A DNA stretch of 64,000 nt, taken from NCBI GenBank assembly GCA_002269645.1, contig NIVC01000390.1, positions 310,001 through 374,000 on the forward strand, read 5' to 3'. The stretch comes from Macrostomum lignano (Eukaryota). A program made the translations under genes and the position numbers. The notes beneath the pieces were generated by a model. The model searched no databases. It saw nothing but the letters and a program-made list of their open reading frames with translations, and was not told where the DNA came from. Below, piece after piece: positions 33,506-55,378 of the stretch; position 1 is the first letter of the stretch, and the number at the start of each line of letters is the position of its first letter.

Positions 33506-36500
33506 GCTCGAATATATTCGGAGTACATATCGGCCAATCTGAACCAGTGCGCCCGGCCGGCCGACTGGGGTTCCGATGGCTTGTTGCTATGCGCCGTACA
33601 ATCCTGCGTCGGCCTCGCCCGGTTGGCCCCGCCCGGTCCGGAGCGTCGGCTGGTTCGCCTGGTCGGAGGCTGCCACACAGCGAGCGTGACGGCGGTGCGC
33701 TGGGTGGCCGACTCCGACCATCAGCAGCGGCGCCTCGGCCTGTCCTGCTCGGCTGACGGCACCGCTAGACTGTGGCTTGCCGGTGGGCCCGACTGCCAGC
33801 TGGACAGTCTGGCCTGTCTGAGCGGCGGGCACGGCAGCCAGGCTACACTGGAGAATGTTGACGGTCTGGCTGTTGACTCTGGAGTGCTGCACGGCGAACC
33901 GACAGGGGCTCTGGTGGCCACGGCCGGCTCGGATCATCGACTGGTGCTGTGGCGGCTAGCTACGAGTAATAGTCAGGTGAAGTATCTTAATGCAATCACG
34001 GGGGTGGTTTACGCGCGTACTTACAGTCGGATGTATTTAATGGTTTCACTGTGATTTACTGTGATTTACACCTGCCCTAATGAGCAGATGTGCAACCGAC
34101 AGCTCAGCCCCAGCTTTTTGCACGGCGCATCTGAAGGCTGCGTACGGCTGTTCAGTCCAAGGACTGGGGGTCACCACACACACCCACAATTGCCCCAGCT
34201 AATGCTGGCATCCATTTTACAGCTGGGTGAACTGAAGCAATGCAGAGTTAAGTGTCTTGCTCACGGACACAACTCGATCCGAGTGGGTCGAGAATCGAAC
34301 CCCCGACCTTTCGGTGAGCCCAACGCTCTAATCACTAGGCTACAACCACTCTTTACTGCTCCCTATTGGCTGAGAATCCTCAGCTTCTGCTTGTTGGAGT
34401 ATTTTCATTAGTAGGTAACACATCCAATGCAGGATAGGAGCTTTTAGGGCCGGAAATAGAGCACTTCACAGGTAGAATATCTTTCTATGCTTTTAGCTTC
34501 CTCTCAGAAAGAAATCACTTTTGAGAGTCTCCCCCCAAATTCTTGCCGGGATTCCCCACCGTGATTTTACGTATCAATAATTTGAGAATCGCAGCAAGAA
34601 ATTCCCCATTTAATTATTCCCCATCATTTTCATCTTTAGATAATTATTACCTGAAAGATTCCTACGGAATTCGTGTCACTTTCAACTGTCAGTTTCTCTC
34701 CCCGAAAACCCCTTGCACTTCCAGCGATTCTCCCGGAATTTCCCCGGAAATCCCCCGGACTCTCAAACATTTCGGCTTCCTCTCGTGAATCTTTTTTCAG
34801 AGAATTCCTCCTTTAGGAATTTCGCCTAAGAATATGGTTTCCACTTGGGAATCGCTTCCAGAGATGTCCTCGGGAATTCCAAAGCGAGTGTTTTATTAAT
34901 AATTTCTGCTAATTTTCAATGGCAGTCGGCTTGGTCAGTGTCTCGTGTTGACGACATCAGCCTCGGCGGCGGGTTTGCATTCGGCCTGCGGCTCATCCGG
35001 TTCAACAATTCGGTGCTGCTGGCCTACGGCGACGACGATGGCGCATTGAATCTGGCCGAAACCGCTGGTGGCGAGGCGATTCGGCGAGTAATTCGCGTCA
35101 GCGGCGGCCACCAGGACTGGGTGCGCGACATCGACTGGGTGGAATTGCCCGACCAGGAGGGGTGCGCTCTGATTGCCACGGCTAGTCAGGACTCCACGGT
35201 CAGGCTGTGGCGGCTGGAGCGTCTGCCAGATTATGACAACGCTGCGGTGACTGGCAAAGGGGACAGTTATAGCGATGGCAAGCGGCCGGCTCGTCTGCTC
35301 GATGTTGACCGTCAGGTGGCTTCTGAGGCTGGCGTGGGCTTCGGGCGGATTGCAATTCGACTGGAATCCGTGCTGCAGGTGTGCGGCTTGCTGCTTTTAT
35401 TGTGCTTTCCGCTGGGCTAATCAGCGGGCTTAGCTCTACTGGGCTAATCAGCGGGCTTAGCTCTACTGGGCTAATCAGCGGGCTTAGCTCTACTGGGCTA
35501 ATCAGCGGGCTTAGCTCTACTGGGCTAATCAGCGGGCTTAGCTCTACTGGGCTAATCAGCGGGCTTAGCTCTACTGGGCTAATCAGCGGGCTTAGCTCTA
35601 CTGGGCTAATCAGCGGGCTTAGCTCTACTGGGCTAATCAGCGGGCTTAGCTCTACTGGGCTAATCAGCGGGCTTAGCTCTACTGGGCTAATCAGCGGGCT
35701 TAGCTCTACTGGGCTAATCAGCGGGCTTAGCTCTACTGGGCTAATCAGCGGGCTTAGCTCTACTGGGCTAATCAGCGGGCTTAGCTCTACTGGGCTAATC
35801 AGCGGGCTTAGCTCTACTGGGCTAATCAGCGGGCTTAGCTCTACTGGGCTAATCAGCGGGCTTAGCTCTACTGGGCTAATCAGCGGGCTTAGCTCTACTG
35901 GGCTAATCAGCGGGCTTAGCTCTACTGGGCTAATCAGCGGGCTTAGCTCTACTGGGCTAATCAGCGGGCTTAGCTCTACTGGGCTAATCAGCGGGCTTAG
36001 CTCTACTGGGCTAATCAGCGGGCTTAGCTCTACTGAGCTGATCATTCAGTTAAAGTCTCACTGACGCCTACTCGCGCAGGGCCACGATTCGGCCGTCAAC
36101 TCCGTCAGATTCTTCTCTGTCAATGATGATGATGGCGCCGATGGTCAGCCCCAGTTGCGGCTGCTAACGAGCAGCATGGACCGCAGCCTGGTGGTCTGGC
36201 AGCCGCAGGCAGACGCTGGCGGACTCTGGCTGGAGCGCGACCGCGTCGGCTCACTCGGCGGCAATCAGCTCGGCTTCCTGCTTGGCCTGCCCAGTCCGCC
36301 TGATTCGCTGTCGGCTGGCGGTCAATCATTGTTAGCCTGCGGATTCAACGGCGCGCTCAGCCTGTGGACTCGGGTTGAAGGCGGCGAAACTGGAGAGGCA
36401 ACTCGCTGGCGCCCACTGGGCTGCTTCGGCGGGCATTCGGCGCCAGTTGAGTCGATAGCCTGGTCGCCAGGCGGCGCTTATTTGTTGAGCGCGTCGGCTG

Positions 36501-38837
36501 ATCAAACCTGCCGGGCGCACGGGCCGTGCTGTAGGCTTGGCGGCCGATGGGGCCAGCTGGCCAGGCCGCAGGTGCACGGTTACGATATGACCGCGCTGGC
36601 CTTTCTAGACGACAGCGGCTGCCGGGTCTATGCCAGCGCGGCTGAGGAGAAACCCGTGCGCTTGTTCCGCGCTCCCAATGGATTTCGGACTGTCCTGGCT
36701 CAGGTAGGTTTAGACAGTCAATTGTCAGGTGCGCCTAATCGAAAATATTTAGGCCAAACCAAATCTAAATTGGGCTTTGACTTACATATAGAAAGTGCTC
36801 AGTCAAAGCCAGAATACTCGAGAAGTGCTCAGTCAAAGCCAGAATACTCGAAAAGTGCTCAGTAAAGCCAAAATACTCAAGAAGTGCTCAGTCAAAGCCA
36901 GAATACTCAGAAGTGCTCAGTCAAAGTCTGAATACTCAGAAGTGCTCAGTCAAAGCCAGAATACTCGAAAAGTGCTCAGTCAAAACCATAATACTCAGAA
37001 GTGCTCAGTCAAAGCCAGAATACTCGAGAAGTGCTCAGTCAAAGTCAGAATACTCAGAAGTGCTCAGTCAAAGCCAGAATACTCTAGAAATGCTCAGTAA
37101 AGCCAGAATACTCAAGAAGTGCTCAGTCAAAACCAGAATACTCAAAAGTGCTCAGTCAAAGTCAGAATACTCAGAAGTGCTCAGTCAAAGCCAGAATACT
37201 CGAAAAGTGCTCAGTCAAAACCATAATACTCAGAAGTGCTCAGTCAAAGCCAGAATACTCGAGAAGTGCTCAGTCAAAGCCAGAATACTCTAGAAATGCT
37301 CAGTAAAGCCAGAATACTCAAAAGTGCTCAGTCAAAACCAGAATACTCAAAAGTGCTCAGTCAAAGTCAGAATACTCAGAAGTGCTCAGTCAAAGCCAGA
37401 ATACTCGAGAAGTGCTTAGTCAAAGCCAAATTACTCTAGAAGTGCTCAGTCAAAGTCAGAATACTCAGAAGTGCTCAGTCAAAGCCAGAATACTCGAGAA
37501 GTGCTCAGTCAAAGCCAGAATACTCGAGAAGTGCTCAGTCAAAGCCAGAATACTCGAGAAGTGCTCAGTCAAAGTCAGAATACTCAGAAGTGCTCAGTCA
37601 AAGCCAGAATACTCGAGAAGTGCTCAGTCAAAGCCAAATTACTCTAGAAGTGCTCAGTCAAAGCCAGAATACTCAGAAGTGCTCAGTCAAAGCCAGAATA
37701 CTCGAGAAGTGCTCAGTCAAAGCCAGAATACTCAGAAGTGCTAAACCTGGGGTATTACTCGGGTAGTTCTCAGCTAAAAATGCTCGGAAAGTACTTGACC
37801 ATAAGTAATACGCACGGCAGGTCTCGAATGCCGACCCTAGCTGTCCCGAGCTGAAGCGCAGCGAGCCGCCGAACCCAGCCGACTCCGCGGATTCAGCCGA
37901 GCCGGAGTACGCCCAAGTACCGTCGCTCGGCCTGTCAAACCAGCCAATGCAGTCGGCAACGTCGGGGCAGCGAGGAAGCGGCGCCGCCGACCCGGAGGAG
38001 CCTCCAAGCGAGGACGCTCTGGCTGATGGCGGCCTGTGGCCGGAGGTCCGCAAGCTGTTCGGCCACGGCGGCGAGGTTCAATCGCTGGCCGCCTGTCCGC
38101 GCCGACGCCTCCTAGCGGCCGCTTGCCGGGCCACCCAACCCGACCAGGCCGGCATTTTGGTTTGGCGCTTGGCGCCAGACTGGAGTCCAAGCTGGCGCCA
38201 AACGCTGGAGCATCACGGCCTCACTGTGGCGCAATTAGCATTCGACTCGTCTGGCAGACGTTTGCTAGCCGTGTCGCGCGACCGCGGCTGGAGCCTCTGG
38301 CGACTGCCGGACGACGAGGACTCGGACAGTCAGATCCAGCTGCTCAGCGCCAGGCGGGCCGCTCACGCCCGCATCGTATGGTCCTGCGCCTGGCCGCCGA
38401 CCCCCACAGATGATGAGGCAGAGAAATTCTTTGCCACCGGTTCGCGAGATCGTCGAATCTCGGTCTGGTTGGCGGCGTTGGCAGCGCCGACTGAGACGAA
38501 GGCGGAGCAGCCGGAGCCAGTGGCCTCGCTGGAGCTGGATGCCGCGGTGACGGCGCTGAGCTTTCGACCTACAGCAACAGCAACAGAATTTTGCTGCGCC
38601 GCCGGTTTGGAATCTGGCGCCGTAGCGTTGATTAGTGTGCTGGCGCCTGGCGCCGATTCGGCGTCGGCTGGTGGTTGGCGCCTGGCGCCGATCGCCATTG
38701 TGGCGTCGGTGCACGCGGCCACCGTGCGCCAGCTGGCGTTTCGACCCGGACAGCCTGACTGTCTGGCCAGCTGTTCGGCCGATGCGACTGTGCGGCTGCT
38801 GCGGATTTGCAGCGATGAGGAAGTCTCCGACTCATGA
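33506..38837 (+). CDS. ELP2: Elongator complex protein 2 (WD40); exons 33506-33976, 34926-35378, 36080-36703, 37821-38837 (854 codons plus initiator)
   Basis: ELP2 motifs: YISANLN..ADWG, GHQDWVRDI, LESVLQ|GHDSAVNSV, LLTSSMDRSLVVW, ARPQVHGYD, SAAEEKPVRLFRAP, VPSLGLSN, LWPEVRKLFGHG, HARIVWSCAW, FATGSRDR. All three introns are GT-AG and phase 0. No genomic in-frame ATG (see findings). Confidence 0.95.
34048..34347 (-). mobile_element. tRNA-derived SINE, family 1 (CORE/Meta-like central domain), antisense in ELP2 intron 1
   Basis: Minus strand: A box TAGCCTAGTGA, B-box-like GGTTCGATTCT, central GTGTCCGTGAGCAAGACACTTAAC...CAGTTCACCCAGCTGTAAAATGG, tandem AGTAAATCAC tail. A second copy lies at 45609. 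Confidence 0.85.
35414..36034. repeat. 27-bp perfect tandem repeat GGGCTAATCAGCGGGCTTAGCTCTACT x23 in ELP2 intron 2
   Basis: 621 bp = 23 x 27; no variant unit seen. Confidence 0.98.
36792..37743. repeat. 28/30-bp minisatellite GTGCTCAGTCAAAGCCAGAATACTC(G)AGAA in ELP2 intron 3
   Basis: Read directly. Confidence 0.97.
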
Positions 38838-38862
38838 TATCAATCGTTATTCTTTGATCCTG

Positions 38863-39975
38863 AGACCACTAGCCCAGCCGAGAATCGCCCCTGACACCAC
38901 TAGCCCAGCCAAGAATCGCCCCTGACACCACTAGCCGAGTCGAGAATCGCCCCTGACACCACTAGCCGAGTCGAGAATCGCCCCTGACACCACTAGCCGA
39001 GTCGAGAATTGCCCCTGACACCACTAGCCCAGCCAAGAATCGCCCCTGACACCACTAGCCCAGCCAAGAATCGCACCTGACAGCATTAGCCCAGCCAAGA
39101 ATCGCACCTGACACCACTAGCCCAGCCAAGAATCGCTCTTGACGCCACTAGCCACCCGAGACGCCCCTGACGCCACTAACCAATCCAAGAATCGCCCCTG
39201 ACACCACTAGCCGAGTCGAGAATCGCCCCTAACACTAGCCCAGCCAAGAATCGCACCTGACACCACTAGCCGAGCCAAGAATCGCACCTGACACCATTAG
39301 CCGAGCCAAGAATCGCCTCTGACGCCACTAGCTCATCTGAGAATCGCTTTTGACGCCACTAGCCCAGCCAAGAATTGCCCCTGACACCACTAGCCCAGCC
39401 AAGAATCGCCCCTGACACCACTAGCCCAGCCAAGAATCGCACCTGACACCACTAGCCCAGCCAAGAATCGCACCTGACACCATTAGCCGAGCCAAGAATC
39501 GCCTCTGACGCCACTAGCTCATCTGAGAATCGCTTTTGACGCCACTAGCCCACCTGAGAATCGCCCCTGACGCCACTAACCAATCCAAGAATCGCCCCTG
39601 ACACCACTATCCGAGCCGAGAATTGCCCCTGACACCACTAGCCCAGCCAAGAAGCGCCCCTGACACCACTAGCCGAGTCGAGAATCGCCCCCTGACACCA
39701 CTAGCCCAGCCAAGAATCGCTCTTGACGCCAATAGGCCACTTGAGAATCGCCCCTGACGCCACTAGCCCAGCCAAGAAGCGCCCCTGACACCACTAGCCG
39801 AGTCGAGAATCGCCCCCTGACGCCACTAGCCCACCTGAGAATCGCTTTTGACGCCAATAGGCCACTTGAGAATCGCCCCTGACGCCACTAGCCCACCCGA
39901 GAATCGCCCCTAAGATCACTAACCAATCCATGAATCGCCCCTGACTCCACTAGCCCACCTGCGAATCGCCCTTAA
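38863..39975. repeat. About 31-bp minisatellite ACTAGCCCAGCCAAGAATCGCCCCTGACACC directly after the ELP2 stop
   Basis: About 36 copies; same family as 43325-44212. Confidence 0.97.
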
Positions 39976-40684
39976 CCGGTCTAAAACCGGCTTAAATTGC
40001 AATCGGATGCGTATTTGCAGAAGCAATGCATTTCGCGTAACTTCTGTTGTAGATTTTCTCTTATGTAATCTACATTCACGCCAAAATTGACGGCCTGCAT
40101 AAGCTTGATAATGAATTAGTCTTCCTTGCTGTTTGCTTTTAAAACTGGTTTATGCCATGCTCTCATTTCTCTAGATCAATAAATACGTCATGGTTCTTTC
40201 TGTAATTTCGTCTTTGACTTTGTTTGTTATGTTTTGTACTTGCTATTTATCTAAACTAATTGGGCTATAAAAAGGATAAGAGTATAATTGTCTGTGCTTT
40301 TATCGGGTTAAACAAGATGTCAAAGGTCCAACCTGTTGAGACTGAGGATTTGAAAAATCAACTGTCTGTGCAATCAAGACTGCTCCCTGACGATAGATTA
40401 GTAAAACTTTTTATGATCAGCCCACGGAAAATTCTCTATAATAGAATTCTGAAGCCAAACCAAACATGAGAACGTTACCTGCTTTTTAAGCAGAGTTTCA
40501 GAGTCGTTATTGAGTAGTTAATAAAGTGTGACTGTGGCATATGAAACTCTAGCTAGCCTATAGTATAACATCTCTTGATCTCGTTAATTTCCTTACAATA
40601 ACGATTATGAATCTCGAACTTCTTATAGGAATCTTAAATGAATGTCCTTTTAGAATCTTCTCCAATTCCACTTATGTATCTCTT

Positions 40685-41515
40685 TAAATTCCACTTAAGA
40701 ATATCCTTTAAATATACTTTTTGAATCTCCTCTGATTCCACCAAAAATTCTCATCAAATTCCACTTAAAAATCTACTCTAATTCCACTTAAGAATCTACT
40801 CGAATTCCAATTAAGAATCTACTCGAATTCCACTTAAGAATCTACTCGAATTCCACTTAAGAATCTACTCAAATTCCACTTAAGAATCTACTCGAATTCC
40901 AATTAAAAATCTACTCGAATTCCACTTAAGAATCTACTCGAATTCCACTTAAGAATCTACTCGAATTCCAATTAAGAATCTACTCTAATTCCACTTAAGA
41001 ATCTACTCGAATTCCACTTAAGAATCTACTCGAATTCCACTTAAGAATCTACTCGAATTCCACTTAAGAATCTACTCGAATTCCACTTAAGAATCTACTC
41101 GAATTCCACTTAAGAATCTACTCGAATTCCAATTAAGAATCTACTCGAATTCCACTTAAGAATCTACTCGAATTCCACTTAAGAATCTACTCGAATTCCA
41201 CTTAAGAATCTACTCGAATTCCAATTAAGAATCTACTCTAATTCCACTTAAGAATCTACTCGAATTCCACTTAAGAATCTACTCGAATTCCACTTAAGAA
41301 TCTACTCGAATTCCACTTAAGAATCTACTCAAATTCCACTTAAGAATCTACTCTAATTCCACTTAAGAATCTACTCGAATTCCACTTAAGAATCTACTCG
41401 AATTCCACTTAAGAATCTACTCGAATTCCACTTAAGAATCTACTCGAATTCCACTTAAGAATCTACTCGAATTCCACTTAAGAATCTACTCAAATTCCAC
41501 TTATAAATCTCCTCT
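40685..41515. repeat. 23-bp minisatellite TTCCACTTAAGAATCTACTCGAA upstream of EXOSC4
   Basis: Period 23, more than 30 copies. Confidence 0.97.
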
Positions 41516-41654
41516 AATTTGACCCCCTTCAGAACCTCCTCTAATCCCCCCCCCCAAAAAAAACTAACTTCCCATGAAAACCCTCCCCAATTCTCAAGTG
41601 ACAAGTCGCATGAGTCACCTATCGCGAGACGCGAGTTCGAGTCTCAATTGATCA

Positions 41655-41671: not shown

Positions 41672-41710
41672 TTCGGCGGTATTCGCCCAGAGTAGAACCC
41701 GGATTCCCCA

Positions 41711-42986
41711 ATGACGGACATCCTACTCAACGGTCGTCGAGTTGACGGTCGCCGGCCAAACGAGCACCGCCTGTTGAGGGCCCAATTAGGCACGCAGCCG
41801 CAGGCTGACGGCTCGGCTCTGCTTGAGCACGGAAACTCGCGCCTGTTAGCCACTGTGCACGGCCCCGCTCAGGCCAGAGCTGCCGACCTGTCACCCGAGG
41901 AGGACTGCGTGCTGCGCGTGTTGTACAACAAGCCGCCGTTTGCCAGCATGACGGAGCGTCGGCGCCGGGGCCGCGGTGACCGCAAGCAGGACGAGACCGC
42001 CCTGCTCATCGAGGAGGCCCTGGGCGGCGTTGTGCTCAAGCAGCTGTACAGACGGTCTCAGATTGAGATTCGAGTTCAGGCATGTTTTTGGCTTTGGAGA
42101 TGGAAGGTTCTGGATTAACTAGAGCTTATATCCCGGATTTCGGTTACCTGTTCTGCAGAAAAAAACATTGAAAATTTCCCACACGGCAATGTGTAGGATT
42201 TAGTTAACCTTGCTTTCTTAGAAATCCATCTGACTGTTGCGCCACGACCCCAGGTTCGATTCCGTGCGCGGCCGGCCGCATTCAATTTGGGGCTTGCGCA
42301 CCACAAATTGGCACTGGGAAGGCTGTCGTGCGATTCACTAACCATGAGGGCCAGCACCCCAAGGCACAGAGTGTGCATGCCTGACTAGATTAGAAGTTCA
42401 GGGCCGCTGTACATCCTGTGTGAGCGTGAAGGCGCTGCACCAGGGTGGCCACTGCCCTCCTGCGAGTATTCGTGTTTATACGTTTGAAGCTCTATGGGAT
42501 TTTTATCCTCTGTTTTAATTACATTAGAAAGTTAATCTCTGTATTGGAAATCACCGCGGATATAAATTGCATGCACATTATAGAAAACAAGAAACTTTCA
42601 CCTGCAACGCTTCCTTCATTATCAATCAGGTGCTTCAATCTGACGGCTCCGAGCTGTCGGCCGCTATTAACGCCGTCAGCCTCGCGCTGATGGACGCCGG
42701 CGTAGCCATGCGAGGCCACCTTGCCGCTGTCACCGTTGGCTACTGCGACCAAGCGCCCCTGGTTGATTTGAACTCCTACGAGCAGAGCGCCGGGCTGCCC
42801 AGCCTCACCGTCGCCTGCGTTGGCCAGCGGGTTCTGCACGCGTCCGTTGGCGCCAGGCTGCACTCCCAACAGCTGGACCCCCTGCTGGCCTGCGCCTCGC
42901 GCGCCTGCGCCTGCGTTGCCAACCAGCTTGGCCAGGACGTCAAGGCTCACCTGCTTGCCGCCTGCTGCTTCCAGTCCGCCGCCTGA
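41711..42986 (+). CDS. EXOSC4: Exosome complex component RRP41; exons 41711-42079, 42630-42986 (241 aa)
   Basis: RVDGRR..E, QADGSALLEHGNSRLLATVHGP, RRGRGDRK, LYRRSQIEIRVQ|VLQSDG..AAINAVSLALMDAG (RNase PH fold). Restoring VQVLQ needs donor CAG|GCATGT (GC-AG intron). Confidence 0.95.
42225..42505 (+). mobile_element. tRNA-derived SINE, family 2, in the EXOSC4 intron
   Basis: GCCACGACC..GGTTCGATTCCGTG (B box), TTGGGGCTTG, GATTCAC, GAGGGCCA.C.CCC.AGGCACAG.GTGTGCATGCCTGAC...CAGGGCCGCTGTAC shared with other copies. Confidence 0.75.
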
Positions 42987-45269: not shown

Positions 45270-45608
45270 CGAACTCATTGTTTTGGAAGTTCTCAAAAGA
45301 TCTTTCAGGCTAAATATTAAGTTTTTAGCTACATCGGAGTAGTAATTATATAATTGAAGATATTACGAGAGATTTTTCCAGACTTTGGCTACCATTTTTA
45401 CAGGAATGCTCAAGCCGGTTGAAATTTTAGATACAACTATAACTAAGTGTGTTTAATATAGCTTTTTGCAGTCCATTCAGACCTACACGCATTGAATTTA
45501 ATTCAAGATTCGTTTGCCAAGTAACGGAGCTTCTGTCTATGGTAGCAAGGCTGGCACAGCGGCATTTAATTTGGTCCATAGCGACTATGAAACCCAATTT
45601 CATAGCTA

Positions 45609-45845
45609 GGATTGTAGTCTAGTGGTTAGAGCGTCGGACTCACGACTTGAAAGGTCGGGGGTTCGATTCCCGATCCCATTGGAACAATTTGTATCCTTGA
45701 GCAAGACACTTAACTCTGCATTGCTTCAGTTCACCCAGCTGTAAAGCCGTACGCAGCCTTCAGATACGCCGCGCAATAGCTGCGGCTGAGCTGTCGGCTG
45801 CACATCTGGCCCAATTAGGGCAGGTGTAATCAAATAAAATATTAA
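45609..45845 (+). mobile_element. tRNA-derived SINE, family 1, internally deleted copy
   Basis: A box TAGTCTAGTGG, B box GGTTCGATTCC, the same central domain and 3' part as the 34048-34347 copy but lacking about 70 bp after GCTGTAAA. Confidence 0.85.
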
Positions 45846-46751: not shown

Positions 46752-46828
46752 TACATTTGTATGTACACACTCTGTGCCTTGGTGGTTGACCCTCGTGTGG
46801 CCAAGAATCACGTCATAGCAAGCCCGCA
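46752..46828 (-). mobile_element. Partial SINE family 2 copy
   Basis: The reverse complement reads GAGGGTCAACCACCAAGGCACAGAGTGTGTACAT. Confidence 0.5.
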
Positions 46829-47715
46829 AAATCTGCTTAATCCTGTCTATCTTTGACCTAAATCCAACCCTACATGTAATTGATCTGATGTGAGCTGATC
46901 CTAAATCTGCTTAATCCTGTCTATCTTTGACCTAAATCCAACCCTAATTGATCTGATGTGAGCTGATCCTAAATCTGCTTAATCCTGTCTATCTTTGACC
47001 TAAATCCAACCCTAATTGATCTGATGTGAGCTGATCCTAAATCTGCTTAATCCTGTCTATCTTTGACCTAAATCCAACCCTAATTGATCTGATGTGAGCT
47101 GATCCTAAATCTGCTTAATCCTGTCTATCTTTGACCTAAATCCAACCCTACATGTAATTGATCTGATGTGAGCTGATCCTAAATCTGCTTAATCCTGTCT
47201 ATCTTTGACCTAAATCCAACCCTAATTGATCTGATGTGAGCTGATCCTAAATCTGCTTAATCCTGTCTATCTTTGACCTAAATCCAACCCTACATGTAAT
47301 TGATCTGATGTGAGCTGATCCTAAATCTGCTTAATCCTGTCTATCTTTGACCTAAATCCAACCCTAATTGATCTGATGTGAGCTGATCCTAAATCTGCTT
47401 AATCCTGTCTATCTTTGACCTAAATCCAACCCTAATTGATCTGATGTGAGCTGATCCTAAATCTGCTTAATCCTGTCTATCTTTGACCTAAATCCAACCC
47501 TACATGTAATTGATCTGATGTGAGCTGATCCTAAATCTGCTTAATCCTGTCTAACTTTAACCTAAATCCAACCCTAATTGATCTGATCTGATCTGATCCT
47601 AAATCTGCTTAATCATGTCTATCTCTGACCTAAATCCAACCCTACATGTAATTGATATCTGACCTGATCCTAAATCTGCTTAATCCTGTCTATCTCTGAC
47701 CTAAATCCAGCCCTA
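46828..47715. repeat. 68/74-bp minisatellite upstream of BABAM1, about 12 copies
   Basis: AAATCTGCTTAATCCTGTCTATCTTTGACCTAAATCCAACCCTA(CATGTA)ATTGATCTGATGTGAGCTGATCCT. Confidence 0.97.
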
Positions 47716-47877
47716 ATTGACTTATTTTAAACCGACACTCCACTAAAATATACTTATACTTAAACTGTGAATAGTTAGCTCAATAGGAAACCACTATTGG
47801 CAGTGAAACTGGTAGCTACTCAACTACAGTGCTCAAAATTCGATTCAGCCCTTGAAAGCCGCAGCAGCAGCAGCGGC

Positions 47878-50583
47878 ATGTCCGAGCCTAAACCTGATCA
47901 GCAGCAGCAGCCGGTTGAGCCTTCGGCTCCGCCAGCTACTGCTAGTAACCAAGACAACGAGAAGCCGCAACAGCAACAGCAGCATCCGCCACCCAGGTCG
48001 AACACGCCAGTCGACTATCAATCGCTGCTGGACTCCAAGCCGACATTCGATTCGAGAAATCGGCAGCTCGGACTGGCCAGCAAATCCAACCGGCCCGAAC
48101 GCCTTGCCTTGTGCGTCGACACCTCGCCCGAATTTGCCGTCAAAACATTTCGGATGCGCAACGGCGAGACCGTGTCGCTGCTAGATTTGACCTTGAAATG
48201 TTTCCACCTGTTGGCGCAGAATAAACTGCGGCTGGGCGGCAAGCACCAGGTGTCACTGGTTGGCATGCGGGGCAATCGGATCTCCGTGCTGGAGCCGTTC
48301 ACTGATGATGCCGCCAAGCTGGCCAAGTGCGAAAAATGATCTTGCCGCTTTCGACTCTCCCCATTGCCGCTTTAGACTCTTCCCATTGCCGCTTTAGACT
48401 CTCCCCATTGCCTCTTTAGACTCTTCCCATTGCCGCTTTCGACTCTCCCCATTGCCGCTTTAGACTCTTCCCATTGCCGCTTTAGACTCTCCCCATTGCC
48501 TCTTTAGACTCTTCCCATTGCCGCTTTAGGCTCTCCCCATTGGACTCTCCACATTGCCGCTTTAGACTCTCCCCATTGCCTCTTTAGACTCTCCCCATTG
48601 CCGCTTTAGACTCTCCCCATTGCCGCTTTAGACTCTCCCCATTGCCGCTTTAGACTCTCCCCATTGCCGCTTTAGACTCTCCCCATTGCCGCTTTAGACT
48701 CTCCCCATTGGACTCTCCACATTGCCGCTTTAGACTCTCCCCATTGCCTCTTTAGACTCTCCCCATTGCCGCTTTAGACTCTCCCCATTGGACTCTCCAC
48801 ATTGCCGCTTTAGACTCTCCACATTGCCGCTTTAGACTCTCCCCATTGCCGCTTTAGACTCTCCCCATTGCCGCTTTAGACTCTCCACATTGCCGTTTTA
48901 GGCTCTCCCATTGCCTCTTTAGACTCTCCCCATTGCCGCTTTAGACTCTCCCCATTGCCTCTTAAGACTCTCCCCATTGTCGCTTTAGACTCTCCCATTG
49001 CCGCTTTAGACTCTCCCCATTGCCTCTTTAGACTCTCCCCATTGCCGCTTTAGACTCTCCCCATTGCCGCTTTAGACTCTCCCCATTGCCGCTTTAGACT
49101 CTCCCCATTGCCGCTTTAGACTCCCCCCATTGCCGCTTTAGACTCTCCCCATTGCCGCTTTAGACTCCCCCCATTGCCTCTTTAGACTCTCCCCATTGCC
49201 GCTTTAGACTCTCCCCATTGCCGCTTTAGACTCTCCCCATTGCCGCTTTAGACTCTCCCCATTGCCGCTTTAGACTCTCCCCATTGCCGCTTTAGACTCC
49301 CCCCATTGCCGCTTTAGACTCTCCCCATTGCCGCTTTAGACTCCCCCCATTGCCTCTTTAGACTCCCCCCATTGCCTCTTTAGACTCTCCCCATTGCCGC
49401 TTTAGACTCTCCACATTGCCGCTTTAGACTCTCCCCATTGCCGCTTTAGACTCTCCCCATTGCCTCTTTAGACTCTCCCCATTGCCGCTTTAGACTCTCC
49501 CCATTGCCGCTTTAGACTCTTCCCATTGCCGCTTTAGACTCTCCCCATTGCCTCTTTAGACTCTCCCCATTGCCGCTTTAGACTCTCCCCATTGGACTCT
49601 CCACATTGCCGCTTTAGACTCTCCACATTGCCGCTTTAGACTCTCCCCATTGCCGCTTTAGACTCTCCCCATTGCCGCTTTAGACTCTCCACATTGCCGT
49701 TTTAGGCTCTCCCCATTGCCTCTTTAGACTCTCCCCATTGCCGCTTTAGACTCTCCCCATTGCCGCTTTAGACTCTCCCCATTGCCGCTTTAGACTCTCC
49801 CCATTGCCTCTTTAGACTCTCCCCATTGCCGCTTTAGACTCTCCCCATTGTTGCTTTGGAATTTCCCCATTGCTGCCTCAGAAACTGCTCACAACTGCCT
49901 TACATGTAGAATAATCCCTCGTACTTTCTAAGAAACTTCCAACATTACTGGCTAAGAATCTTTCCTTAGTGACTTGTAATCTTCCAATACAGTCGCCTTA
50001 CAATCGCTGCAACTCATCCTTCGCCAGAGCCGCAGCCTCGCAAGGGCTTCGCGACCTGCTTCAACAGCCGGCCGGAGACGAGGCAGACTTCAGTCTTGAC
50101 TGCCTGCTCGAGTACGCCCGCGGCCAGTTGTGCCCGAACCGACTGCTCGTCGATAACTCGTCGCCGTCGTCCTCGGGTTCTCAGCCGAGTTTGCTGCGAA
50201 TTGTGCTACTCTGCTGCCGATCAAAGTCGCCGCCTCACATTAGCAAGCGACTATTGGAGCCTCTGCTAGCAGAGCCCGACCTGTTCTTCGACATTCTGTA
50301 CGTGCACGAGCCGCCGGCTGAGGACAATCGGGCCGAGGAGATTTTCAAGCGACTCTGCTGTCTGGAGAGCGAGCACAGCCGCTCCTACATACACGAGGTG
50401 TTGAATAATCCCACGGCGTTTTTTAATCAGGCTGCCACCTTTCTGGCTCACCCGCTGCAGCGGCCGCCTCAGTCTGACGCCAACTATCGGCTGCAGAGAC
50501 CGCCGCCGACGCCGCCACAGGAGCCTGTAGCTGGCTTGCTGCCAACCGCTACCCTCAGCCAGCAACCTGACAATACTGACTAG
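47878..50583 (+). CDS. BABAM1: BRISC and BRCA1-A complex member 1 (MERIT40/NBA1, vWA-like); exons 47878-48326, 50028-50583 (334 aa)
   Basis: PERLALCVDTS.E, F..LAQNK, FSLDCL, LLRIVLLCCRS, FFDILYVHE, FLAHPLQRPPQS.ANY. Donor aa|gtgcga and acceptor tcgccag|a join in phase 2. Confidence 0.92.
48345..49850. repeat. 22-bp minisatellite TTAGACTCTCCCCATTGCCGCT filling the BABAM1 intron, about 68 copies
   Basis: Period 22. Confidence 0.97.
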
Positions 50584-50610
50584 AGCTATATGAAGGCTGA
50601 TAGAAAATAT

Positions 50611-51258
50611 TGACTGACTGACTGACTGACTGACTGACTGACTGACTGACTGACTGACTGACTGACTGACTGACTGACTGACTGACTGACTGACTGACTG
50701 ACTGACTGACTGACTGACTGACTGACTGACTGACTGACTGACTGACTGACTGACTGACTGACTGACTGACTGACTGACTGACTGACTGACTGACTGACTG
50801 ACTGACTGACTGACTGACTGACTGACTGACTGACTGACTGACTGACTGACTGACTGACTGACTGACTGACTGACTGACTGACTGACTGACTGACTGACTG
50901 ACTGACTGACTGACTGACTGACTGACTGACTGACTGACTGACTGACTGACTGACTGACTGACTGACTGACTGACTGACTGACTGACTGACTGACTGACTG
51001 ACTGACTGACTGACTGACTGACTGACTGACTGACTGACTGACTGACTGACTGACTGACTGACTGACTGACTGACTGACTGACTGACTGACTGACTGACTG
51101 ACTGACTGACTGACTGACTGACTGACTGACTGACTGACTGACTGACTGACTGACTGACTGACTGACTGACTGACTGACTGACTGACTGACTGACTGACTG
51201 ACTGACTGACTGACTGACTGACTGACTGACTGACTGACTGACTGACTGACTGACTGAC
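50611..51258. repeat. (TGAC)162 microsatellite starting 28 bp after the BABAM1 stop
   Basis: 648 bp, uninterrupted. Confidence 0.98.
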
Positions 51259-51914
51259 TCCTTTTTTTATTACTCGTAGTTATATAATCCTAAGTTAATG
51301 GAGTGATCTGTAGCAGACTGCCAAAATAATTTTAACAAAGATTGTATGGTTCTGTTTACGTAACTTTCAGGACAAATAATTCATTGATTATCACTCAGTT
51401 GCTTAAATATGCATTTCTAATACTGTTACCCAACATTTGCCATATAATTAATCAATGCTCGTAAATTTATCCGTCGTAGCAACCTTAGTAAACTGTATAA
51501 AGACTGCACTTGATCCTGTCTAAGTAACAGAAATTCACTGATTATTTTTAAACTTCCAGCCAACGCTGCTTCTAAAGCCAATTTTCGCCAATCATCTACG
51601 ATGTTACTGTTAAAAGAATATTGATCACAGTAGGATTCCTGTGTATCTACTATAAAATATCAAAAAGTACTGGTTTTTACATGTAGATTCCGACGGTTGG
51701 AAATATACCTGTATGTAACAGTCTAACAATAAATAACTATGATAAATATTGAACTTATTTCATTGATTTGTTGTGGTATAAATGGCTTTCATTTTATATA
51801 AAATAGTCATCGCATTTCTGGGAAATTAAAGTGAAGTGTTTTTGTTGAAATTTGGGCGACCGATTCAAAAAAATTGGCATCTTATTTCTGTGAAATTAAA
51901 AACCTCTCATTTGT

Positions 51915-52165: not shown

Positions 52166-52220
52166 TTTCGCATTTCTAGTCTAATCTGTCCCCCTCACCA
52201 AAACTCGCCCTAACGACTTT

Positions 52221-55200
52221 ATGGCCTCTAATAATATTGCTGCAGAGGGCACAGCAGCTGAGCTGCAGTCACGGCAGGCTCCATATCTCTGCTGGCGCTG
52301 CCAGCTGCGCATCTGTCAGTCAGATTTCACCCAGCTGATGTCAGACATTGCCGCGGCCAGCAGCAAAGATTCTCAGCTAGGCGGAGACAGTCAAGAGGCG
52401 AAACGAGTGAAACTCAACGGCGATTCTCCTGCATGCACCAGCACCGAAGTCTGCAGCGCATGTCTAGGCATCCTAGCCACGCTCGACCGTCTGGATAGCG
52501 ACGTCTGCGATCTAATCGCAAACGCGGTGGCTGCCAGCGGGCACAGCTTCACCGCCTGCCGCCTATTAGTCAGCTCGCCAATTGTCTGCCTGATCCGCGA
52601 TCACGCCTGGCAACTGGCTAAGGCTGAGCAACAGTCGGTGGAGAAAATTAAGGAGGCGCCCATATCGGCGAAGGACCTGTGGAAGGCGCTGGCCAGGCAG
52701 GCTATCGAGCGGAGGCTTCTGTCTGATGGAGGTCAACAGAGTGCGTATGGGCATATGGAATATGGAATGGGCATATCTGCTTGCTAACTAACTAACTAAC
52801 TAATCAACTAACTAACTAACTAATCAACTAACTAACTAATTAACTAACTAACTAACTAATCAACTAACTAACTAAGCAGTTGGCAAACAGCTGAATAGGC
52901 AGTCCAGTTCAGTTCTGAGCTTGAGTAAAAAATAAAGGATGAGAAGAAATGTACCAACCATGAGGTCGCCTTGCAGTGGGTTAGGGGGCGTATTACTCTT
53001 AAATCTCAATATTGATAACACAAACTTCAACCGCTAATCTGCAATTGCAGCGCGTGGCGACGTGGAAACAATTCCTCTACAATTGGCGTTGGAATTTCGT
53101 TACGCTGACGATGCGTCAGAAAGTGACGACTGTCTGCGCCGTCTGTCGAGCGGCGGCGGCGGCGGCGGCAGCACCAGACACGGGGCGGCGAGTGCGCTGG
53201 CCTCGGTCAGTGCTGAAGCTTTCAAAGCCGCTCTGCCCTGTCCACCGGCTCCCGCCAGCGGCCCAGTGAAACTCATTGTAGCCGAGGTAGGGCTTCTAGT
53301 AGTTATTTGGTTGAGCGGGTTGCCTCTAAAATACCTAGAAATATTGCATGACAATAATTCTGCAACCTGTCTTAGTTCTGTAGGCTTTTAACATTGATGC
53401 TGGTCCGTTTTCTAACTTACGAGCTCCTATTAAGACAAAAGCTATGCTATTACTGTGGTTTTAGTTGTCCCAAGTTTATCATAATATTTTGAAAAGTTAC
53501 CGTACGCCAGTAACTACTCAGTTGGTTAGTAGTAGCCTGATCCCTCCGCCACTCCAGGTGAGCAAGGAGCTCATGTTTGTCGGCGGCCGCTACCGCAAAC
53601 TCTGCCGCCGGCTGCCGCAGACACCCTGGATCCTGGACGGCGAACGACGCATGGACACTAGCGTCGAAGAGTTGATCAGTCCGGCCATTGTCCGGCTTGC
53701 GAAAGCCGACTCGGCCAGCTTCGCTTCGGCCGGCCGCGAAGATGTCGACGTGCGAATGCTTGGCCGAGGCCGGCCGTTCCTGCTCAGGCTGCTCAACCCG
53801 AGAGTTGCCCGACTGACTGCGGCCGAGACTGCGGCCCTGCAGGCGGAGATCAACGCGGCCGATGATCGGGTCCAGGTGAGAATTGGTCCCGGGCTCGATT
53901 CGTAAATATTTCACTTCTATCGCTTGATTACTTTTGCGCGAGTCGATAAGAAAAATGGACAGGTTCGAGTTTCTTCTTTTAGAGGAAAGAGTCTTCCGGA
54001 TAAATATGATATTCATCGCTTGTGACATGAAAATAGAGACGTCTTTAAGCGCTGGAGCCCGATCAAATCTTAATATTAGGATATAGCTTTCTCTATTCGT
54101 ATAGAATAGACTGAGCATCAGGATGTGCTTGATTTCTAGACAATACATGCGGAAGACTTGACTTGTGTTATAACTACTTTTGTAATATACATTTTCGGAG
54201 AAACTCAACGAAGCTATGAAACAGGCAGAGATTATAACAAAATATCGAGCATTTTATCGACCTGCCGCATGATTTGTTGTAAAATTTGAAAAGTTTTTAT
54301 CTTGATGTTCAGAAAGTAGACCTAAACGTAAACCTTGTTCATCATTCTATTTTTTAATCTGCCGTGATTGTGTGCTTGTTTACTAGCATATTTCTGTTAG
54401 TCAGAATTGTCTATTTGATTGCTATGAACGAGCGCCTATCAGGGCACAGTAGTTCAGCGTCTGACTCTCATGCCACGACCCGGCTGTGGTTCGATTCCGT
54501 GTTTGGCCGGCCGCTTTCATTTGGGGCTTGTGGACGAAATTGGCCAGGAGGTTGATGTGCGATTCACAACCATGAGGACCAACCCCCCAGGCACAGAAAG
54601 TGTGTATGCCTGACAGGACTCTACGGCAAAGTCAAGGGCCTCTGTGTGAGTGTGTGCATGAGTGCGTGCCTTCGTACAGTATTGGCGCGCTTCCATGTTC
54701 TCAGGAGTCAGCGAAATGGGCTGAATTGCCGTCAGCGCTGCTTGTGGGATGATGTCGCCGCAGGCGTTGCACCAGATGTCCACAGCCCTCTTTGGAATGT
54801 TCGTTTTATTTAATAAGCGCTGATATTATTCGAACTCGCAGGTGTCGCACTTGTGCCAGGTGAACCGGGCCCATTGTGAGGCGTTGCGAGCCGGCGAAAG
54901 CGAAAAAGTGAAATGCTACTCTGCACTGTGCCGCTGCACTGGCGGGCCGCCAATCACCGCTGAGGACGCCGGCAAGCTCTCTGGTTTAGCCGCCTCAGGC
55001 CTGGTGCTGGAGCAGTCCACCCCGGTCCGCGTGCTGCACCGCCGCACCGTCGCTGTCCGCAAGCGGCGCATCCTCAGCCTCGATCTGGAGCCGCTGCCGC
55101 CCGACGCTGCTGATGCCGGCCGGCTGTTCCGCCTGCGCCTTCGCACTGAAGCCGGCGCCTACGTCAAGGAATTCGTCCACGGTGACCTCGGACGGACCCG

Positions 55201-55378
55201 ACCGTCGCTTGGCGAACTGCTGGGCGAGGGGCGGCAATGCGACCTCCTGCTGCTGGACGTTGTCGACGTGGAGCTCGACTGGCCACACGTTGGCGGCGAC
55301 GCGGCTGCGGATTCGAAAGCGGATCTGAAAGCGGACCCGGATGCAGATCTAAAAGTGGACCCGGTTGTGGATCTATAG
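52221..55378 (+). CDS. PUS10: tRNA pseudouridine synthase Pus10; exons 52221-52740, 53051-53286, 53558-53875, 54842-55378 (536 aa)
   Basis: N-terminal CxxC (LCWRC) and CSACLGIL, FVGGRYRKLCRRLPQTPW..DGER, catalytic SAGREDVDVRMLG.GRPF, GE.EKVKCY, Q.TPVRVLHRR..AVRKR, TEAGAYVKEFVHGDLGRTRPSL, DLLLLDV. Intron phases 1, 0, 0 are consistent. The start codon is less certain. Confidence 0.95.
52785..52876. repeat. (CTAA)n microsatellite in PUS10 intron 1
   Basis: Read directly. Confidence 0.95.
54440..54805 (+). mobile_element. SINE family 2 copy in PUS10 intron 3
   Basis: Same ordered motifs including the B box GGTTCGATTCCGTG. Confidence 0.72.

What the first reader, a model, noticed from the sequence alone, without database searches (positions are those of the whole stretch)
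33506..55378. Five co-oriented housekeeping genes (ELP2-EXOSC4-DUSP-BABAM1-PUS10) look like a trans-spliced operon
Seen: five unrelated conserved genes lie on the + strand within 22 kb. Spacers are 1.2-2.9 kb, mostly tandem repeat. Acceptor-like AGs lie just upstream of the first codon (33505, 41671, 44223, CAG run 47862-73). DUSP has only about 20 bp of unique sequence between satellite and ATG. Three of the five act on RNA (U34 modification, pseudouridylation, exosome). Known: flatworms, including Macrostomum, have SL trans-splicing and reported polycistronic units enriched in conserved housekeeping genes. Inference: this is a single polycistronic unit resolved by SL addition, possibly starting at the SAMD1-like gene (+, 5.7 kb upstream, spacer also mostly satellite). 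I cannot tell whether this cluster is already described.
Basis: partly seen in the sequence, partly recalled or inferred. Interest (0 to 1): 0.78.

Follow-up and report, generated by a model that had tools for sequence, protein, structure and literature searches.

The report
Flatworm trans-spliced five-gene operon candidate
This is a run of five housekeeping genes in the flatworm Macrostomum lignano that very probably receive a spliced leader and are at least partly transcribed together, which is an ordinary example of an operon type already described for this species.

Summary
The window is Macrostomum lignano scaffold NIVC01000390.1, positions 310001-374000 of assembly Mlig_3_7. ELP2, RRP41/EXOSC4, a DUSP22/15-like phosphatase, BABAM1 and PUS10 lie on the + strand with no annotated minus-strand gene between them. 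The spacers are 1.2-2.9 kb and 34-71% tandem repeat. Two paralogous scaffolds keep the same order.

Spliced-leader use is well supported by sequence. ELP2 has no genomic ATG, and its acceptor at 33505 puts the leader's terminal ATG in frame at the orthologous N-terminus. One PUS10 paralog has an in-frame acceptor TTTCAG exactly where this copy reads ATG.

Co-transcription has annotation-level support for one junction only. The deposited model PAA84063.1 (Mlig000721g6) splices ELP2 exon 3 to the RRP41 acceptor at 41671. RRP41-to-DUSP and BABAM1-to-PUS10 meet the published M. lignano operon criterion of less than 1 kb after repeat subtraction. DUSP-to-BABAM1 is borderline. The deposited annotation gives DUSP, BABAM1 and PUS10 different transcriptional-unit name prefixes, so its RNA-seq assembly did not join them to ELP2/RRP41 or to each other.

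Operons with repeat-inflated spacers, enriched in conserved genes, were described for this species in 2021. This is therefore a new member of a known kind, of low interest. No RNA reads could be examined here.

The parts
26120..27790 (+). SAMD1-like gene (single exon as annotated; 556 aa here, 373 aa in paralog). It is a possible upstream neighbour and is not shown to belong to the unit.
   Evidence: Pfam SAMD1_WH and SAM. NCBI CDS coordinates. AATAAA at 27958. 5715-bp spacer to ELP2, 65% tandem repeat, 1978 bp non-repeat.
31593..33472 (.). 24-nt satellite immediately upstream of the ELP2 acceptor (outron sequence)
   Evidence: TRF
33500..33505 (+). ELP2 trans-splice acceptor ATTCAG. The leader's terminal ATG joins in frame to GCT at 33506.
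   Evidence: Sequence. No in-frame genomic ATG after the TGA at 33482-84. With the leader's Met added, residue 44 aligns to residue 43 of mammalian ELP2. The acceptor is identical in all three copies.
33506..38837 (+). ELP2 (Elongator subunit 2). Exons 33506-33976, 34926-35378, 36080-36703 and 37821-38837 (854 aa plus the leader-encoded Met).
   Evidence: Reconstruction. The paralog's 847-aa model is an exact match to PAA53402.1. PDB ELP2 E 3e-91.
38859..39971 (.). 31-nt satellite starting 21 nt after the ELP2 stop. It must lie in the ELP2 3'UTR, because the first AATAAA is at 40178.
40652..41519 (.). 23-nt satellite in the ELP2-RRP41 intercistronic region
41672..41695 (+). First 24 nt of the RRP41 5' exon. 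The deposited chimeric model PAA84063.1 uses it as its last coding exon (FGGIRPE*), cis-spliced from the ELP2 donor at 36704 to the acceptor TTACAG at 41666-41671.
   Evidence: The reconstructed 523-aa protein is an exact match to PAA84063.1, BOX15_Mlig000721g6, on this scaffold.
41711..42986 (+). RRP41/EXOSC4. Exons 41711-42079 and 42630-42986 (241 aa, with a GC-AG intron in the NCBI model).
43331..44214 (.). 28-nt satellite of the same family as 38859-39971. It fills nearly all of the RRP41-DUSP intercistronic region.
   Evidence: AATAAA at 43217 and 43292. About 22 nt of non-repeat sequence lie between the predicted cleavage site and the DUSP acceptor.
44218..44223 (+). DUSP acceptor CCGCAG, 7 nt upstream of the ATG
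   Evidence: The 5'-partial CDS models start 1-4 nt after it in the three copies.
44231..45269 (+). DUSP22/15-like dual-specificity phosphatase. Exons 44231-44509 and 44976-45269.
   Evidence: PAA84064.1.
45270..47848 (.). DUSP-BABAM1 spacer. It holds the 3'UTR, a tRNA-like SINE (45608-45838), 990 bp of AT-rich unique sequence and a 68-nt satellite (46829-47720). It is the least operon-like junction and the most likely place for an internal promoter.
47878..50583 (+). BABAM1/MERIT40. Exons 47878-48326 and 50028-50583. The intron is 95% 22-nt satellite. Candidate acceptors are 47843-47848 (ATTCAG) or the CAG run at 47862-47873.
50611..51259 (.). (TGAC)162 inside the BABAM1 3'UTR. The first AATAAA after the stop is at 51728.
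52218..52223 (+). PUS10 5' junction. This copy reads TTTATG, paralog L002 reads TTTCAG (an acceptor in frame with the leader's ATG) and L001 reads TTTCTG.
   Evidence: The assembly was polished with RNA-seq reads.
52221..55378 (+). PUS10. Exons 52221/52224-52740, 53051-53286, 53558-53875 and 54842-55378.
   Evidence: Exact match of the 533-aa model to PAA84065.1.
58084..61437 (-). Minus-strand 801-aa gene that ends the co-oriented run (convergent with PUS10)
   Evidence: Also present in the paralog.

Best explanation
The five genes are spliced-leader (SL) trans-spliced M. lignano genes. They are made from one or a few polycistronic precursor RNAs of the type already described for this species.

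The proposed mechanism has three steps.
1. RNA polymerase II reads through the upstream gene's poly(A) site and the satellite-filled spacer.
2. Each downstream mRNA is released by cleavage and polyadenylation of the gene ahead of it.
3. The 35-nt leader is added at an acceptor a few to about 40 nt before the coding region.

For ELP2, and ancestrally for PUS10, the leader's terminal AUG is the start codon. For RRP41 and DUSP it opens a short upstream reading frame of 8 codons counting the AUG.

**Shown at annotation level:** transcript continuity from ELP2 into the RRP41 5' exon.

**Inferred:**
- Co-transcription of RRP41 with DUSP, where about 22 nt of non-repeat sequence separate the poly(A) region from the acceptor.
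- Co-transcription of BABAM1 with PUS10, where 54-210 nt of non-repeat sequence separate them.

**Least certain:** the DUSP-BABAM1 link. The cluster may be two units, ELP2-RRP41-DUSP and BABAM1-PUS10.
For: **Organism and locus.** The window is 100% identical to NIVC01000390.1.

**Published background (PMC8629364).**
- Repeats inflate operon spacers. The modal spacer is about 100 bp after repeat subtraction.
- The operon criterion is less than 1 kb after repeat subtraction.
- Operons of up to nine genes were called.
- The acceptor motif is YTNCAG, and the leader ends in ATG.

**Leader-donated start codons.**
- ELP2 has no in-frame ATG. Its acceptor at 33505 is in frame, and the N-terminal register matches mammalian ELP2.
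- A PUS10 paralog has TTTCAG|GCC exactly where this copy has ATG.

**Bridging transcript.**
- PAA84063.1 consists of ELP2 exons 1-3 plus 41672-41695. The exact sequence match was verified.
- One RRP41 copy carries the same transcriptional-unit prefix, Mlig000721, as ELP2.
- Those units are RNA-seq assemblies described as often being precursor RNAs (PMC5730564).
- Chimeric gene models are an accepted signature of flatworm operons, even across several kb (PMC12582326).

**Repeat-adjusted distances from poly(A) signal to next acceptor.**

| Junction | Non-repeat distance (nt) |
|---|---|
| ELP2 to RRP41 | 258-600 |
| RRP41 to DUSP | 22 |
| DUSP to BABAM1 | 762-1110 |
| BABAM1 to PUS10 | 54-210 |

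**Other support.**
- No opposite-strand gene is annotated inside the cluster.
- Order and strand are kept on two paralogous scaffolds.
Against: - No RNA reads, leader-read pile-ups, poly(A) sites or promoter marks could be examined. All transcript evidence is second-hand, through deposited CDS models.
- The deposited annotation gives DUSP, BABAM1 and PUS10 transcriptional-unit prefixes different from ELP2/RRP41 and from each other. The RNA-seq assembly therefore did not bridge three of the four spacers.
- The 2021 paper attributes such breaks to repeats, but independent transcription would give the same result.
- The DUSP-BABAM1 spacer has 1.7 kb of non-repeat sequence from the stop codon. It is AT-rich and could hold a promoter.
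- The chimeric ELP2-RRP41 isoform skips ELP2 exon 4 and could be a rare read-through product.
- The three copies are only 0-4% diverged, so conserved gene order says nothing about selection.
- Annotated 5' ends lie 0-15 nt from the acceptors, not exactly at them.
Confidence: 0.66

Rival explanations
1. Each gene is transcribed from its own promoter, located in or next to the satellite spacers, and is trans-spliced as a monocistronic precursor. Co-orientation is chance. The ELP2-RRP41 chimeric model is read-through noise.
For: - About 60% of SL trans-spliced M. lignano genes are not in operons.
- DUSP, BABAM1 and PUS10 carry separate transcriptional-unit prefixes.
- The unique spacer segments are AT-rich, with GC 0.31-0.39.
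- Five genes sharing a strand has probability about 1/16 by chance.
Against: - DUSP has about 22 nt of non-repeat sequence between the RRP41 poly(A) region and its acceptor. Its promoter would have to lie inside a satellite or inside RRP41.
- A canonical GT-AG junction joins ELP2 to the RRP41 acceptor in a deposited model.
- Three or four junctions meet the published operon criterion.
Confidence: 0.22
2. The unit is larger than the reader's core claim. It is a six-gene operon that starts at the promoter of the SAMD1-like gene, in the AT-rich region at 24-26 kb.
For: - The SAMD1-like gene is on the + strand, 5.7 kb upstream.
- The spacer is 65% tandem repeat.
- No gene is annotated between it and ELP2.
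- ELP2 is itself trans-spliced and so has an outron of unknown length.
- The same neighbour is present in a paralog.
- The region upstream of the SAMD1-like gene has GC 0.28, which is promoter-like.
Against: - The non-repeat spacer is about 1.8-2.0 kb, above the 1-kb criterion.
- No chimeric model was recovered that links the two genes; the SAMD1-like gene's own locus tag and transcriptional-unit prefix were not retrieved.
- The unique 570-bp segment at 31023-31592, or other unique pieces, could hold the ELP2 promoter.
Confidence: 0.2
3. The genes are conventional, non-trans-spliced genes. The missing start codons and 5'-partial models are assembly or annotation artefacts.
For: - The assembly is PacBio-based and was polished with RNA-seq.
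- The three copies differ at the PUS10 start.
- All the models are flagged 'partial'.
Against: - ELP2 lacks an ATG in all three copies, and its acceptor is identical in all three.
- Its N-terminal register matches orthologs only if the Met comes from the leader.
- Trans-splicing is widespread in this species.
Confidence: 0.03

Closest known systems
Macrostomum lignano SL-resolved operons (Ustyantsev & Berezikov 2021, PMC8629364; transcriptional units of Wudarski et al. 2017, PMC5730564)
   Same: - Same species and the same single 35-nt leader ending in ATG.
- Co-oriented conserved housekeeping genes.
- Spacers inflated by tandem repeats that shrink to tens or hundreds of bp once repeats are subtracted.
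- YTNCAG-type acceptors.
- A size of 5 genes, which is within the published range of 2-9.
   Different: - Nothing differs in kind.
- This cluster is not named in the text or held supplements of the papers searched.
- One junction (DUSP-BABAM1) is at or above the 1-kb threshold.
- 93% of the published operons have 2-3 genes, so a five-gene unit would be in the upper tail.
Chimeric gene models at operons of parasitic flatworms (Mol Biol Evol 2025, PMC12582326)
   Same: - A deposited model fuses the upstream gene to the trans-splice acceptor exon of the downstream gene across a multi-kb spacer.
- The leader's 3'-terminal ATG can serve as a start codon.
   Different: - That study covers cestodes and trematodes, not Macrostomum.
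- The chimera here arises by skipping the last ELP2 exon, not by simple read-through.
Caenorhabditis elegans operons
   Same: - A polycistronic precursor is resolved by 3' end formation plus leader addition.
- Operons are enriched in housekeeping and RNA-processing genes.
   Different: - In C. elegans the spacers are about 100 bp and a specialised SL2 is used for downstream genes.
- Here the raw spacers are 1.2-2.9 kb and there is a single leader for all positions.

Membership tests
SL trans-spliced mRNAs of M. lignano | A 3' splice acceptor just upstream of the coding region with no cis donor partner | tested here: met
   Acceptors lie at 33505, 41671, 44223, 47848 (or the CAG run) and, in paralog L002, 52223. 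The satellites directly upstream of RRP41 and DUSP are almost free of GT on the + strand; those upstream of ELP2, BABAM1 and PUS10 are not.
SL trans-spliced mRNAs of M. lignano | The 35-nt leader is present on the mature mRNA | not testable with these tools
   No M. lignano RNA-seq or transcript contigs were reachable. There is no leader copy in the window.
SL trans-spliced mRNAs of M. lignano | The reading frame depends on the leader's terminal AUG. This is sufficient for membership but not required. | tested here: met
   ELP2 has no genomic ATG, its acceptor is in frame and its register matches orthologs. PUS10 paralogs L001 and L002 lack the ATG, and L002 has an in-frame acceptor. The leader's AUG is not in frame for RRP41, DUSP or BABAM1.
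M. lignano operon, operational definition of PMC8629364 | Immediately adjacent genes in the same orientation with no opposite-strand transcript between them | tested here: met
   NCBI gene lists for this scaffold and two paralogs
M. lignano operon, operational definition of PMC8629364 | Repeat-adjusted intergenic distance below 1 kb | tested here: inconclusive
   Only tandem repeats were subtracted. Non-repeat distances from stop codon to acceptor are 853, 353, about 1.7 kb and 731 bp. From the predicted poly(A) signal they are 258-600, 22, 762-1110 and 54-210 bp. Three junctions pass and DUSP-BABAM1 is borderline. The authors' RepeatMasker track and experimental poly(A) sites were not available.
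M. lignano operon, operational definition of PMC8629364 | The downstream gene is annotated as SL trans-spliced from SL-read mapping | not testable with these tools
   The SL-read track is not in any reachable resource. Only indirect support is available: 5'-partial CDS models that start 0-15 nt after the acceptors.
Operon in the strict sense (one promoter, one precursor RNA) | A transcript that physically links neighbouring genes | tested here: inconclusive
   Met for ELP2 to RRP41 through the deposited chimeric model PAA84063.1 and the shared prefix Mlig000721. For RRP41-DUSP there is only an ML2-based fused model, P0002, of doubtful origin. Nothing links DUSP-BABAM1 or BABAM1-PUS10.
Operon in the strict sense (one promoter, one precursor RNA) | A single promoter upstream of the first gene and none internally | not testable with these tools
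   Needs CAGE, chromatin or reporter data.
C. elegans-type operon | Spacers of about 100 bp and a specialised downstream leader (SL2) | tested here: not met
   Raw spacers are 1.2-2.9 kb. M. lignano has a single leader.
Gene identities (ELP2, EXOSC4/RRP41, DUSP, BABAM1, PUS10) | Best matches to the named families over most of the protein length | tested here: met
   Pfam. PDB searches. UniRef names.

The most novel reading that the evidence does not exclude
Kilobase-long satellite arrays are carried inside the precursor RNA, in both 3'UTRs and intercistronic regions. In this flatworm, 3' end formation of the upstream gene and leader addition to the downstream gene can therefore be about 0.9-1.7 kb apart (raw spacing from predicted cleavage site to next acceptor), unlike the tightly coupled events about 100 nt apart in nematodes. 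The arrays are shaped by sense-strand constraints: they are nearly free of GT donor dinucleotides on the + strand, and they carry no poly(A) signals or strong acceptors on either strand.
Probability: 0.3. Interest if true: 0.45.

Novelty: new member of a known kind. Interest (0 to 1): 0.24.

Why it matters
If confirmed, this would be one more operon of above-average size in a species where about 15% of genes were already assigned to operons by the same features. That adds little to biology.

It has three practical uses.
- **Annotation fixes for this scaffold.** PAA84063.1 is an ELP2-RRP41 chimera. RRP41 and BABAM1 lack their own protein entries. The ELP2 and PUS10 models are marked 'partial' probably because their start codon comes from the leader.
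- **Promoter choice.** Anyone picking promoters for M. lignano transgenes should note that the sequence directly upstream of these genes is outron or satellite, not promoter.
- **A convenient test locus.** Transgenesis exists for this species, so the cluster could be used to ask how far apart poly(A) site and trans-splice site can be.

Tried and rejected
**Searches that failed or found nothing.**
- Two protein-homology searches with ELP2 queries timed out. A third, with the ELP2 N-terminus, found nothing.
- Exact look-ups returned only NCBI genome contigs. No M. lignano transcript contigs (Logan or ENA) were reachable, so leader sequences on mRNAs could not be seen.
- The six locus-tag prefixes appear in no paper text. 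They are also absent from the held supplements of PMC5816591 and PMC5730564.

**Ideas dropped.**
- I first read the suffix gN as 'Nth gene within a transcriptional unit'. DUSP is Mlig002529g1, g2 and g3 on three different scaffolds. The suffix therefore numbers genes across a cluster of similar units, and only the shared prefix is informative.
- I considered that BABAM1 is missing from this scaffold's annotation because it was merged with PUS10. The PUS10 model is 5'-partial and starts at 52230, after the ATG, so its transcript does not extend upstream.
- I considered that the DUSP ATG is itself leader-derived. The L002 model extends to the acceptor at 44223, so this was rejected.

**Tests that gave no usable result.**
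- Gene order in other flatworms could not be tested. The PUS10 search returned no named flatworm other than M. lignano, and the closest unnamed hit sits on an uninformative contig.
- Rfam gathering scan, tRNA scan and leader search of the window found nothing.
- Brute-force exon enumeration timed out once and was replaced by constrained enumeration.
- Counts of poly(A) signals and YTNCAG acceptors in the satellites do not discriminate between strands.
Full report
**Where the window comes from.** A search with the RNase PH gene returned Macrostomum lignano proteins at 99% identity. Exact look-ups led to three scaffolds of assembly Mlig_3_7, GCA_002269645.1. The non-repeat segments of the window are 100% identical to NIVC01000390.1, so window position equals record position minus 310000. 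Two other scaffolds carry paralogous or allelic copies that are 96-100% identical in unique sequence: NIVC01003094.1 (L001) and NIVC01000985.1 (L002).

**Checking the observation.** The five gene identities hold.
- ELP2 is named by UniRef and matches PDB Elongator protein 2 at E 3e-91.
- RRP41/EXOSC4 matches Pfam RNase_PH and human RRP41 at E 2e-42.
- The phosphatase matches Pfam DSPc and is closest to DUSP22 and DUSP15.
- BABAM1/MERIT40 is named by UniRef and matches PDB BABAM1 at E 1e-13.
- PUS10 matches both Pus10 Pfam domains.

I rebuilt the exon structures and verified them by exact match to deposited proteins.
- ELP2: 33506-33976, 34926-35378, 36080-36703, 37821-38837.
- RRP41: 41711-42079, 42630-42986.
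- DUSP: 44231-44509, 44976-45269.
- BABAM1: 47878-48326, 50028-50583.
- PUS10: 52221-52740, 53051-53286, 53558-53875, 54842-55378.

All are on the + strand. The deposited annotation lists no minus-strand gene between the SAMD1-like gene (26120-27790, +) and PUS10. A minus-strand 801-aa gene at 58084-61437 closes the run.

The spacers measure 2873, 1244, 2608 and about 1640 bp. Their tandem-repeat content is 69%, 71%, 34% and 55%. 'Mostly satellite' therefore fails for the DUSP-BABAM1 spacer. Co-orientation of five genes has a chance probability of about 1/16 and is weak evidence on its own.

**Evidence for spliced-leader trans-splicing.** The M. lignano leader is CGGTCTCTTACTGCGAAGACTCAATTTATTGCATG, and the enriched acceptor motif is [T/C]TNCAG (PMC8629364).

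- **ELP2.**
  - Its reading frame opens after a TGA at 33482-84 and holds no ATG before the conserved N-terminus.
  - The acceptor ATTCAG ends at 33505, so the leader's ATG joins in frame to GCT at 33506.
  - With that Met added, residue 44 aligns to residue 43 of mammalian ELP2, so no upstream coding exon is missing.
  - The acceptor is identical in all three copies.
- **PUS10.**
  - This copy reads TTTATG|GCC at 52218-52226. L002 reads TTTCAG|GCC, a YTNCAG acceptor in frame with the leader's ATG. L001 reads TTTCTG|GCC.
  - The next in-frame Met lies beyond the conserved N-terminal CxxC motif. The paralogs therefore need the leader's AUG.
- **RRP41.** It has a strong acceptor, TTACAG, ending at 41671, 39 nt before its ATG.
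- **DUSP.** It has CCGCAG ending at 44223, 7 nt before its ATG and 9 nt after the satellite.
- **BABAM1.** It has ATTCAG ending at 47848, plus the CAG run.

The deposited CDS models for ELP2, DUSP, BABAM1 and PUS10 are all flagged 'partial'. They begin 0-15 nt downstream of these acceptors. This fits transcript models that stop where leader-bearing reads cease to map. All reported flatworm leaders end in ATG, and that ATG can serve as a start codon (PMC12582326). I could not see the leader on any RNA, because no M. lignano transcript contigs were reachable.

**Evidence for co-transcription.** The strongest item is a deposited gene model on this very scaffold.
- The 'ELP2' entry here has 523 residues, and its CDS ends at window 41695.
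- I reconstructed it as ELP2 exons 1-3 spliced from the donor GTAGGT at 36704 to the acceptor at 41671, followed by 41672-41695 (FGGIRPE, stop).
- That sequence is an exact match to PAA84063.1, BOX15_Mlig000721g6.
- The Mlig_3_7 models come from RNA-seq assembly (StringTie/TACO) and a de novo transcriptome. The assembled 'transcriptional units' were described as often being trans-splicing precursors that contain several genes (PMC5730564).
- A canonical junction from ELP2 into the RRP41 trans-splice acceptor requires one RNA that runs through ELP2 exon 4, its poly(A) signals and 2 kb of satellite.
- One RRP41 copy is tagged Mlig000721g3. It shares its transcriptional-unit prefix with ELP2 (Mlig000721g2 and g6).
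- Chimeric models of this kind are treated as a signature of operons in flatworms, even across several kb.

The other junctions have only positional evidence. I used canonical poly(A) signals and subtracted tandem repeats. The remaining non-repeat distance from predicted cleavage site to next acceptor is given below.

| Junction | Non-repeat distance (nt) |
|---|---|
| ELP2 to RRP41 | 258-600 |
| RRP41 to DUSP | about 22 |
| DUSP to BABAM1 | 762-1110 |
| BABAM1 to PUS10 | 54-210 |

The published operon criterion for this species is less than 1 kb after repeat subtraction, with a mode near 100 bp. Three junctions pass clearly. A DUSP promoter would have to lie inside the satellite or inside RRP41.

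Against a single unit, the deposited annotation gives DUSP (Mlig002529), BABAM1 (Mlig028105) and PUS10 (Mlig015012 / Mlig033751) prefixes different from ELP2/RRP41 and from each other. The 2021 authors note that assembled units tend to break in repeat-rich operon spacers. Independent transcription would look the same. The DUSP-BABAM1 spacer has about 1.7 kb of non-repeat, AT-rich sequence and a SINE. It is the most likely site of an internal promoter. The SAMD1-like gene is separated from ELP2 by about 1.8-2.0 kb of non-repeat sequence, and nothing links the two.

**What the paralogs add.** Order and orientation are the same on all three scaffolds, including the SAMD1-like gene upstream and the convergent minus-strand gene downstream. 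The copies differ by only 0-4%, so this shows recent duplication, not conserved synteny. Gene order in other flatworms could not be tested.

**Comparison with what is known.**
- About 15% of genes are assigned to operons of 2-9 genes.
- Trans-spliced genes are enriched in conserved genes.
- Repeats account for much of the spacer length in operons.

The cluster differs from nematode operons in raw spacer length and in the single leader, as do all operons of this species. None of the six locus-tag prefixes appears in the papers or held supplements I could search. The cluster is therefore not individually described, although the genome-wide operon call of 2021 probably includes most of it (inference).

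**Verdict.**
Trans-splicing is very likely for all five genes. Co-transcription has annotation-level support for ELP2-RRP41 and is likely for RRP41-DUSP and BABAM1-PUS10. It is open for DUSP-BABAM1 and unlikely to extend back to the SAMD1-like gene.
- This is a new member of a known kind, with low interest.
- The useful by-products are annotation corrections and a few side observations, listed separately.

Noticed in passing
window 52221-52223; L002 20155-20157; L001 about 18576-18578: The PUS10 'start codon' differs in all three copies: ATG here, CAG in L002 and CTG in L001. In L002 the CAG forms a trans-splice acceptor in frame with the leader's ATG. Mlig_3_7 was polished with Pilon using RNA-seq reads mapped end-to-end. 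ATG and CTG may therefore be leader-derived bases written over the genomic acceptor, which would be an accidental footprint of the leader. Real variants cannot be excluded.
   Followed up: partly
window 27997-51259 (tandem-repeat arrays): Eight arrays in the spacers and introns of the + strand cluster are almost free of GT on the + strand (0-6 occurrences) but have 15-162 on the minus strand (23-162 in seven of them). The + strand GT count exceeds the minus-strand count in only three arrays, by 2-fold at most. This fits selection against cryptic 5' splice donors in transcribed outron, intron and 3'UTR sequence. The sample is small and was not tested genome-wide.
   Followed up: partly
window 38859-39971 and 43331-44214: One satellite family occurs in two different spacers in the same orientation, after the ELP2 stop and before the DUSP acceptor. 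The unit is ...AGCCCAGCCAAGAATCGCCCCTGACACC..., 31 nt in one array and 28 nt in the other, differing by an ACT indel.
   Followed up: partly
window 38838-40178 and 50584-51728: There is no AATAAA or ATTAAA between the ELP2 stop and 40178, or between the BABAM1 stop and 51728. Unless non-canonical signals are used, the 3'UTRs run through a 1.1-kb 31-nt satellite and through (TGAC)162.
   Followed up: no
window 45608-45838 (+) and 34055-34345 (-): A tRNA-like SINE lies in the DUSP-BABAM1 spacer. Its head matches Rfam tRNA at 21.3 bits, below the gathering score. An 87%-identical inverted copy lies in ELP2 intron 1. Similar translated motifs recur in the RRP41, DUSP and PUS10 introns.
   Followed up: partly
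window 41711-42986 and 47878-50583: RRP41 and BABAM1 have no protein entry of their own on this scaffold in GCA_002269645.1, although both are annotated on the two paralogous scaffolds. RRP41 appears to be swallowed by the chimeric model PAA84063.1.
   Followed up: partly
window 42080-42629: The NCBI RRP41 model uses a GC-AG intron (donor GCATGT). A UniRef model uses a GT donor 6 nt upstream, which gives a protein two residues shorter.
   Followed up: no
L002 2976-6689: The ELP2 copy on NIVC01000985.1 is modelled as a truncated 610-aa protein with a frame change in exon 4. This is either a degenerating duplicate or an assembly indel.
   Followed up: no
window 55307-56144: The PUS10 reading frame ends inside a 24-nt tandem repeat that encodes (A/V)DLKVDPD units. 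Protein length differs between copies (533, 539 and 540 aa) and between database versions.
   Followed up: no
window 41672-41695 and 44224-44247: For RRP41 and DUSP the leader's AUG would open an upstream reading frame of 8 codons (AUG plus 7 sense codons) before a stop. It ends 15 nt before the RRP41 AUG and overlaps the DUSP AUG out of frame. Translation of these two genes would need leaky scanning or reinitiation.
   Followed up: no
window 1389-2525 (-), 12867-14051 (+), 7008-7613: Two seven-transmembrane, receptor-like ORFs lie upstream of the cluster. A (GGTA)151 microsatellite lies between them. None of these was examined further.
   Followed up: no
P0002 (UniRef A0A1I8F8L0, from the older ML2 assembly): A 343-aa model fuses RRP41 to DUSP and carries several frame-repair artefacts. 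It may reflect a polycistronic transcript or only ab initio over-prediction on an error-rich assembly.
   Followed up: partly
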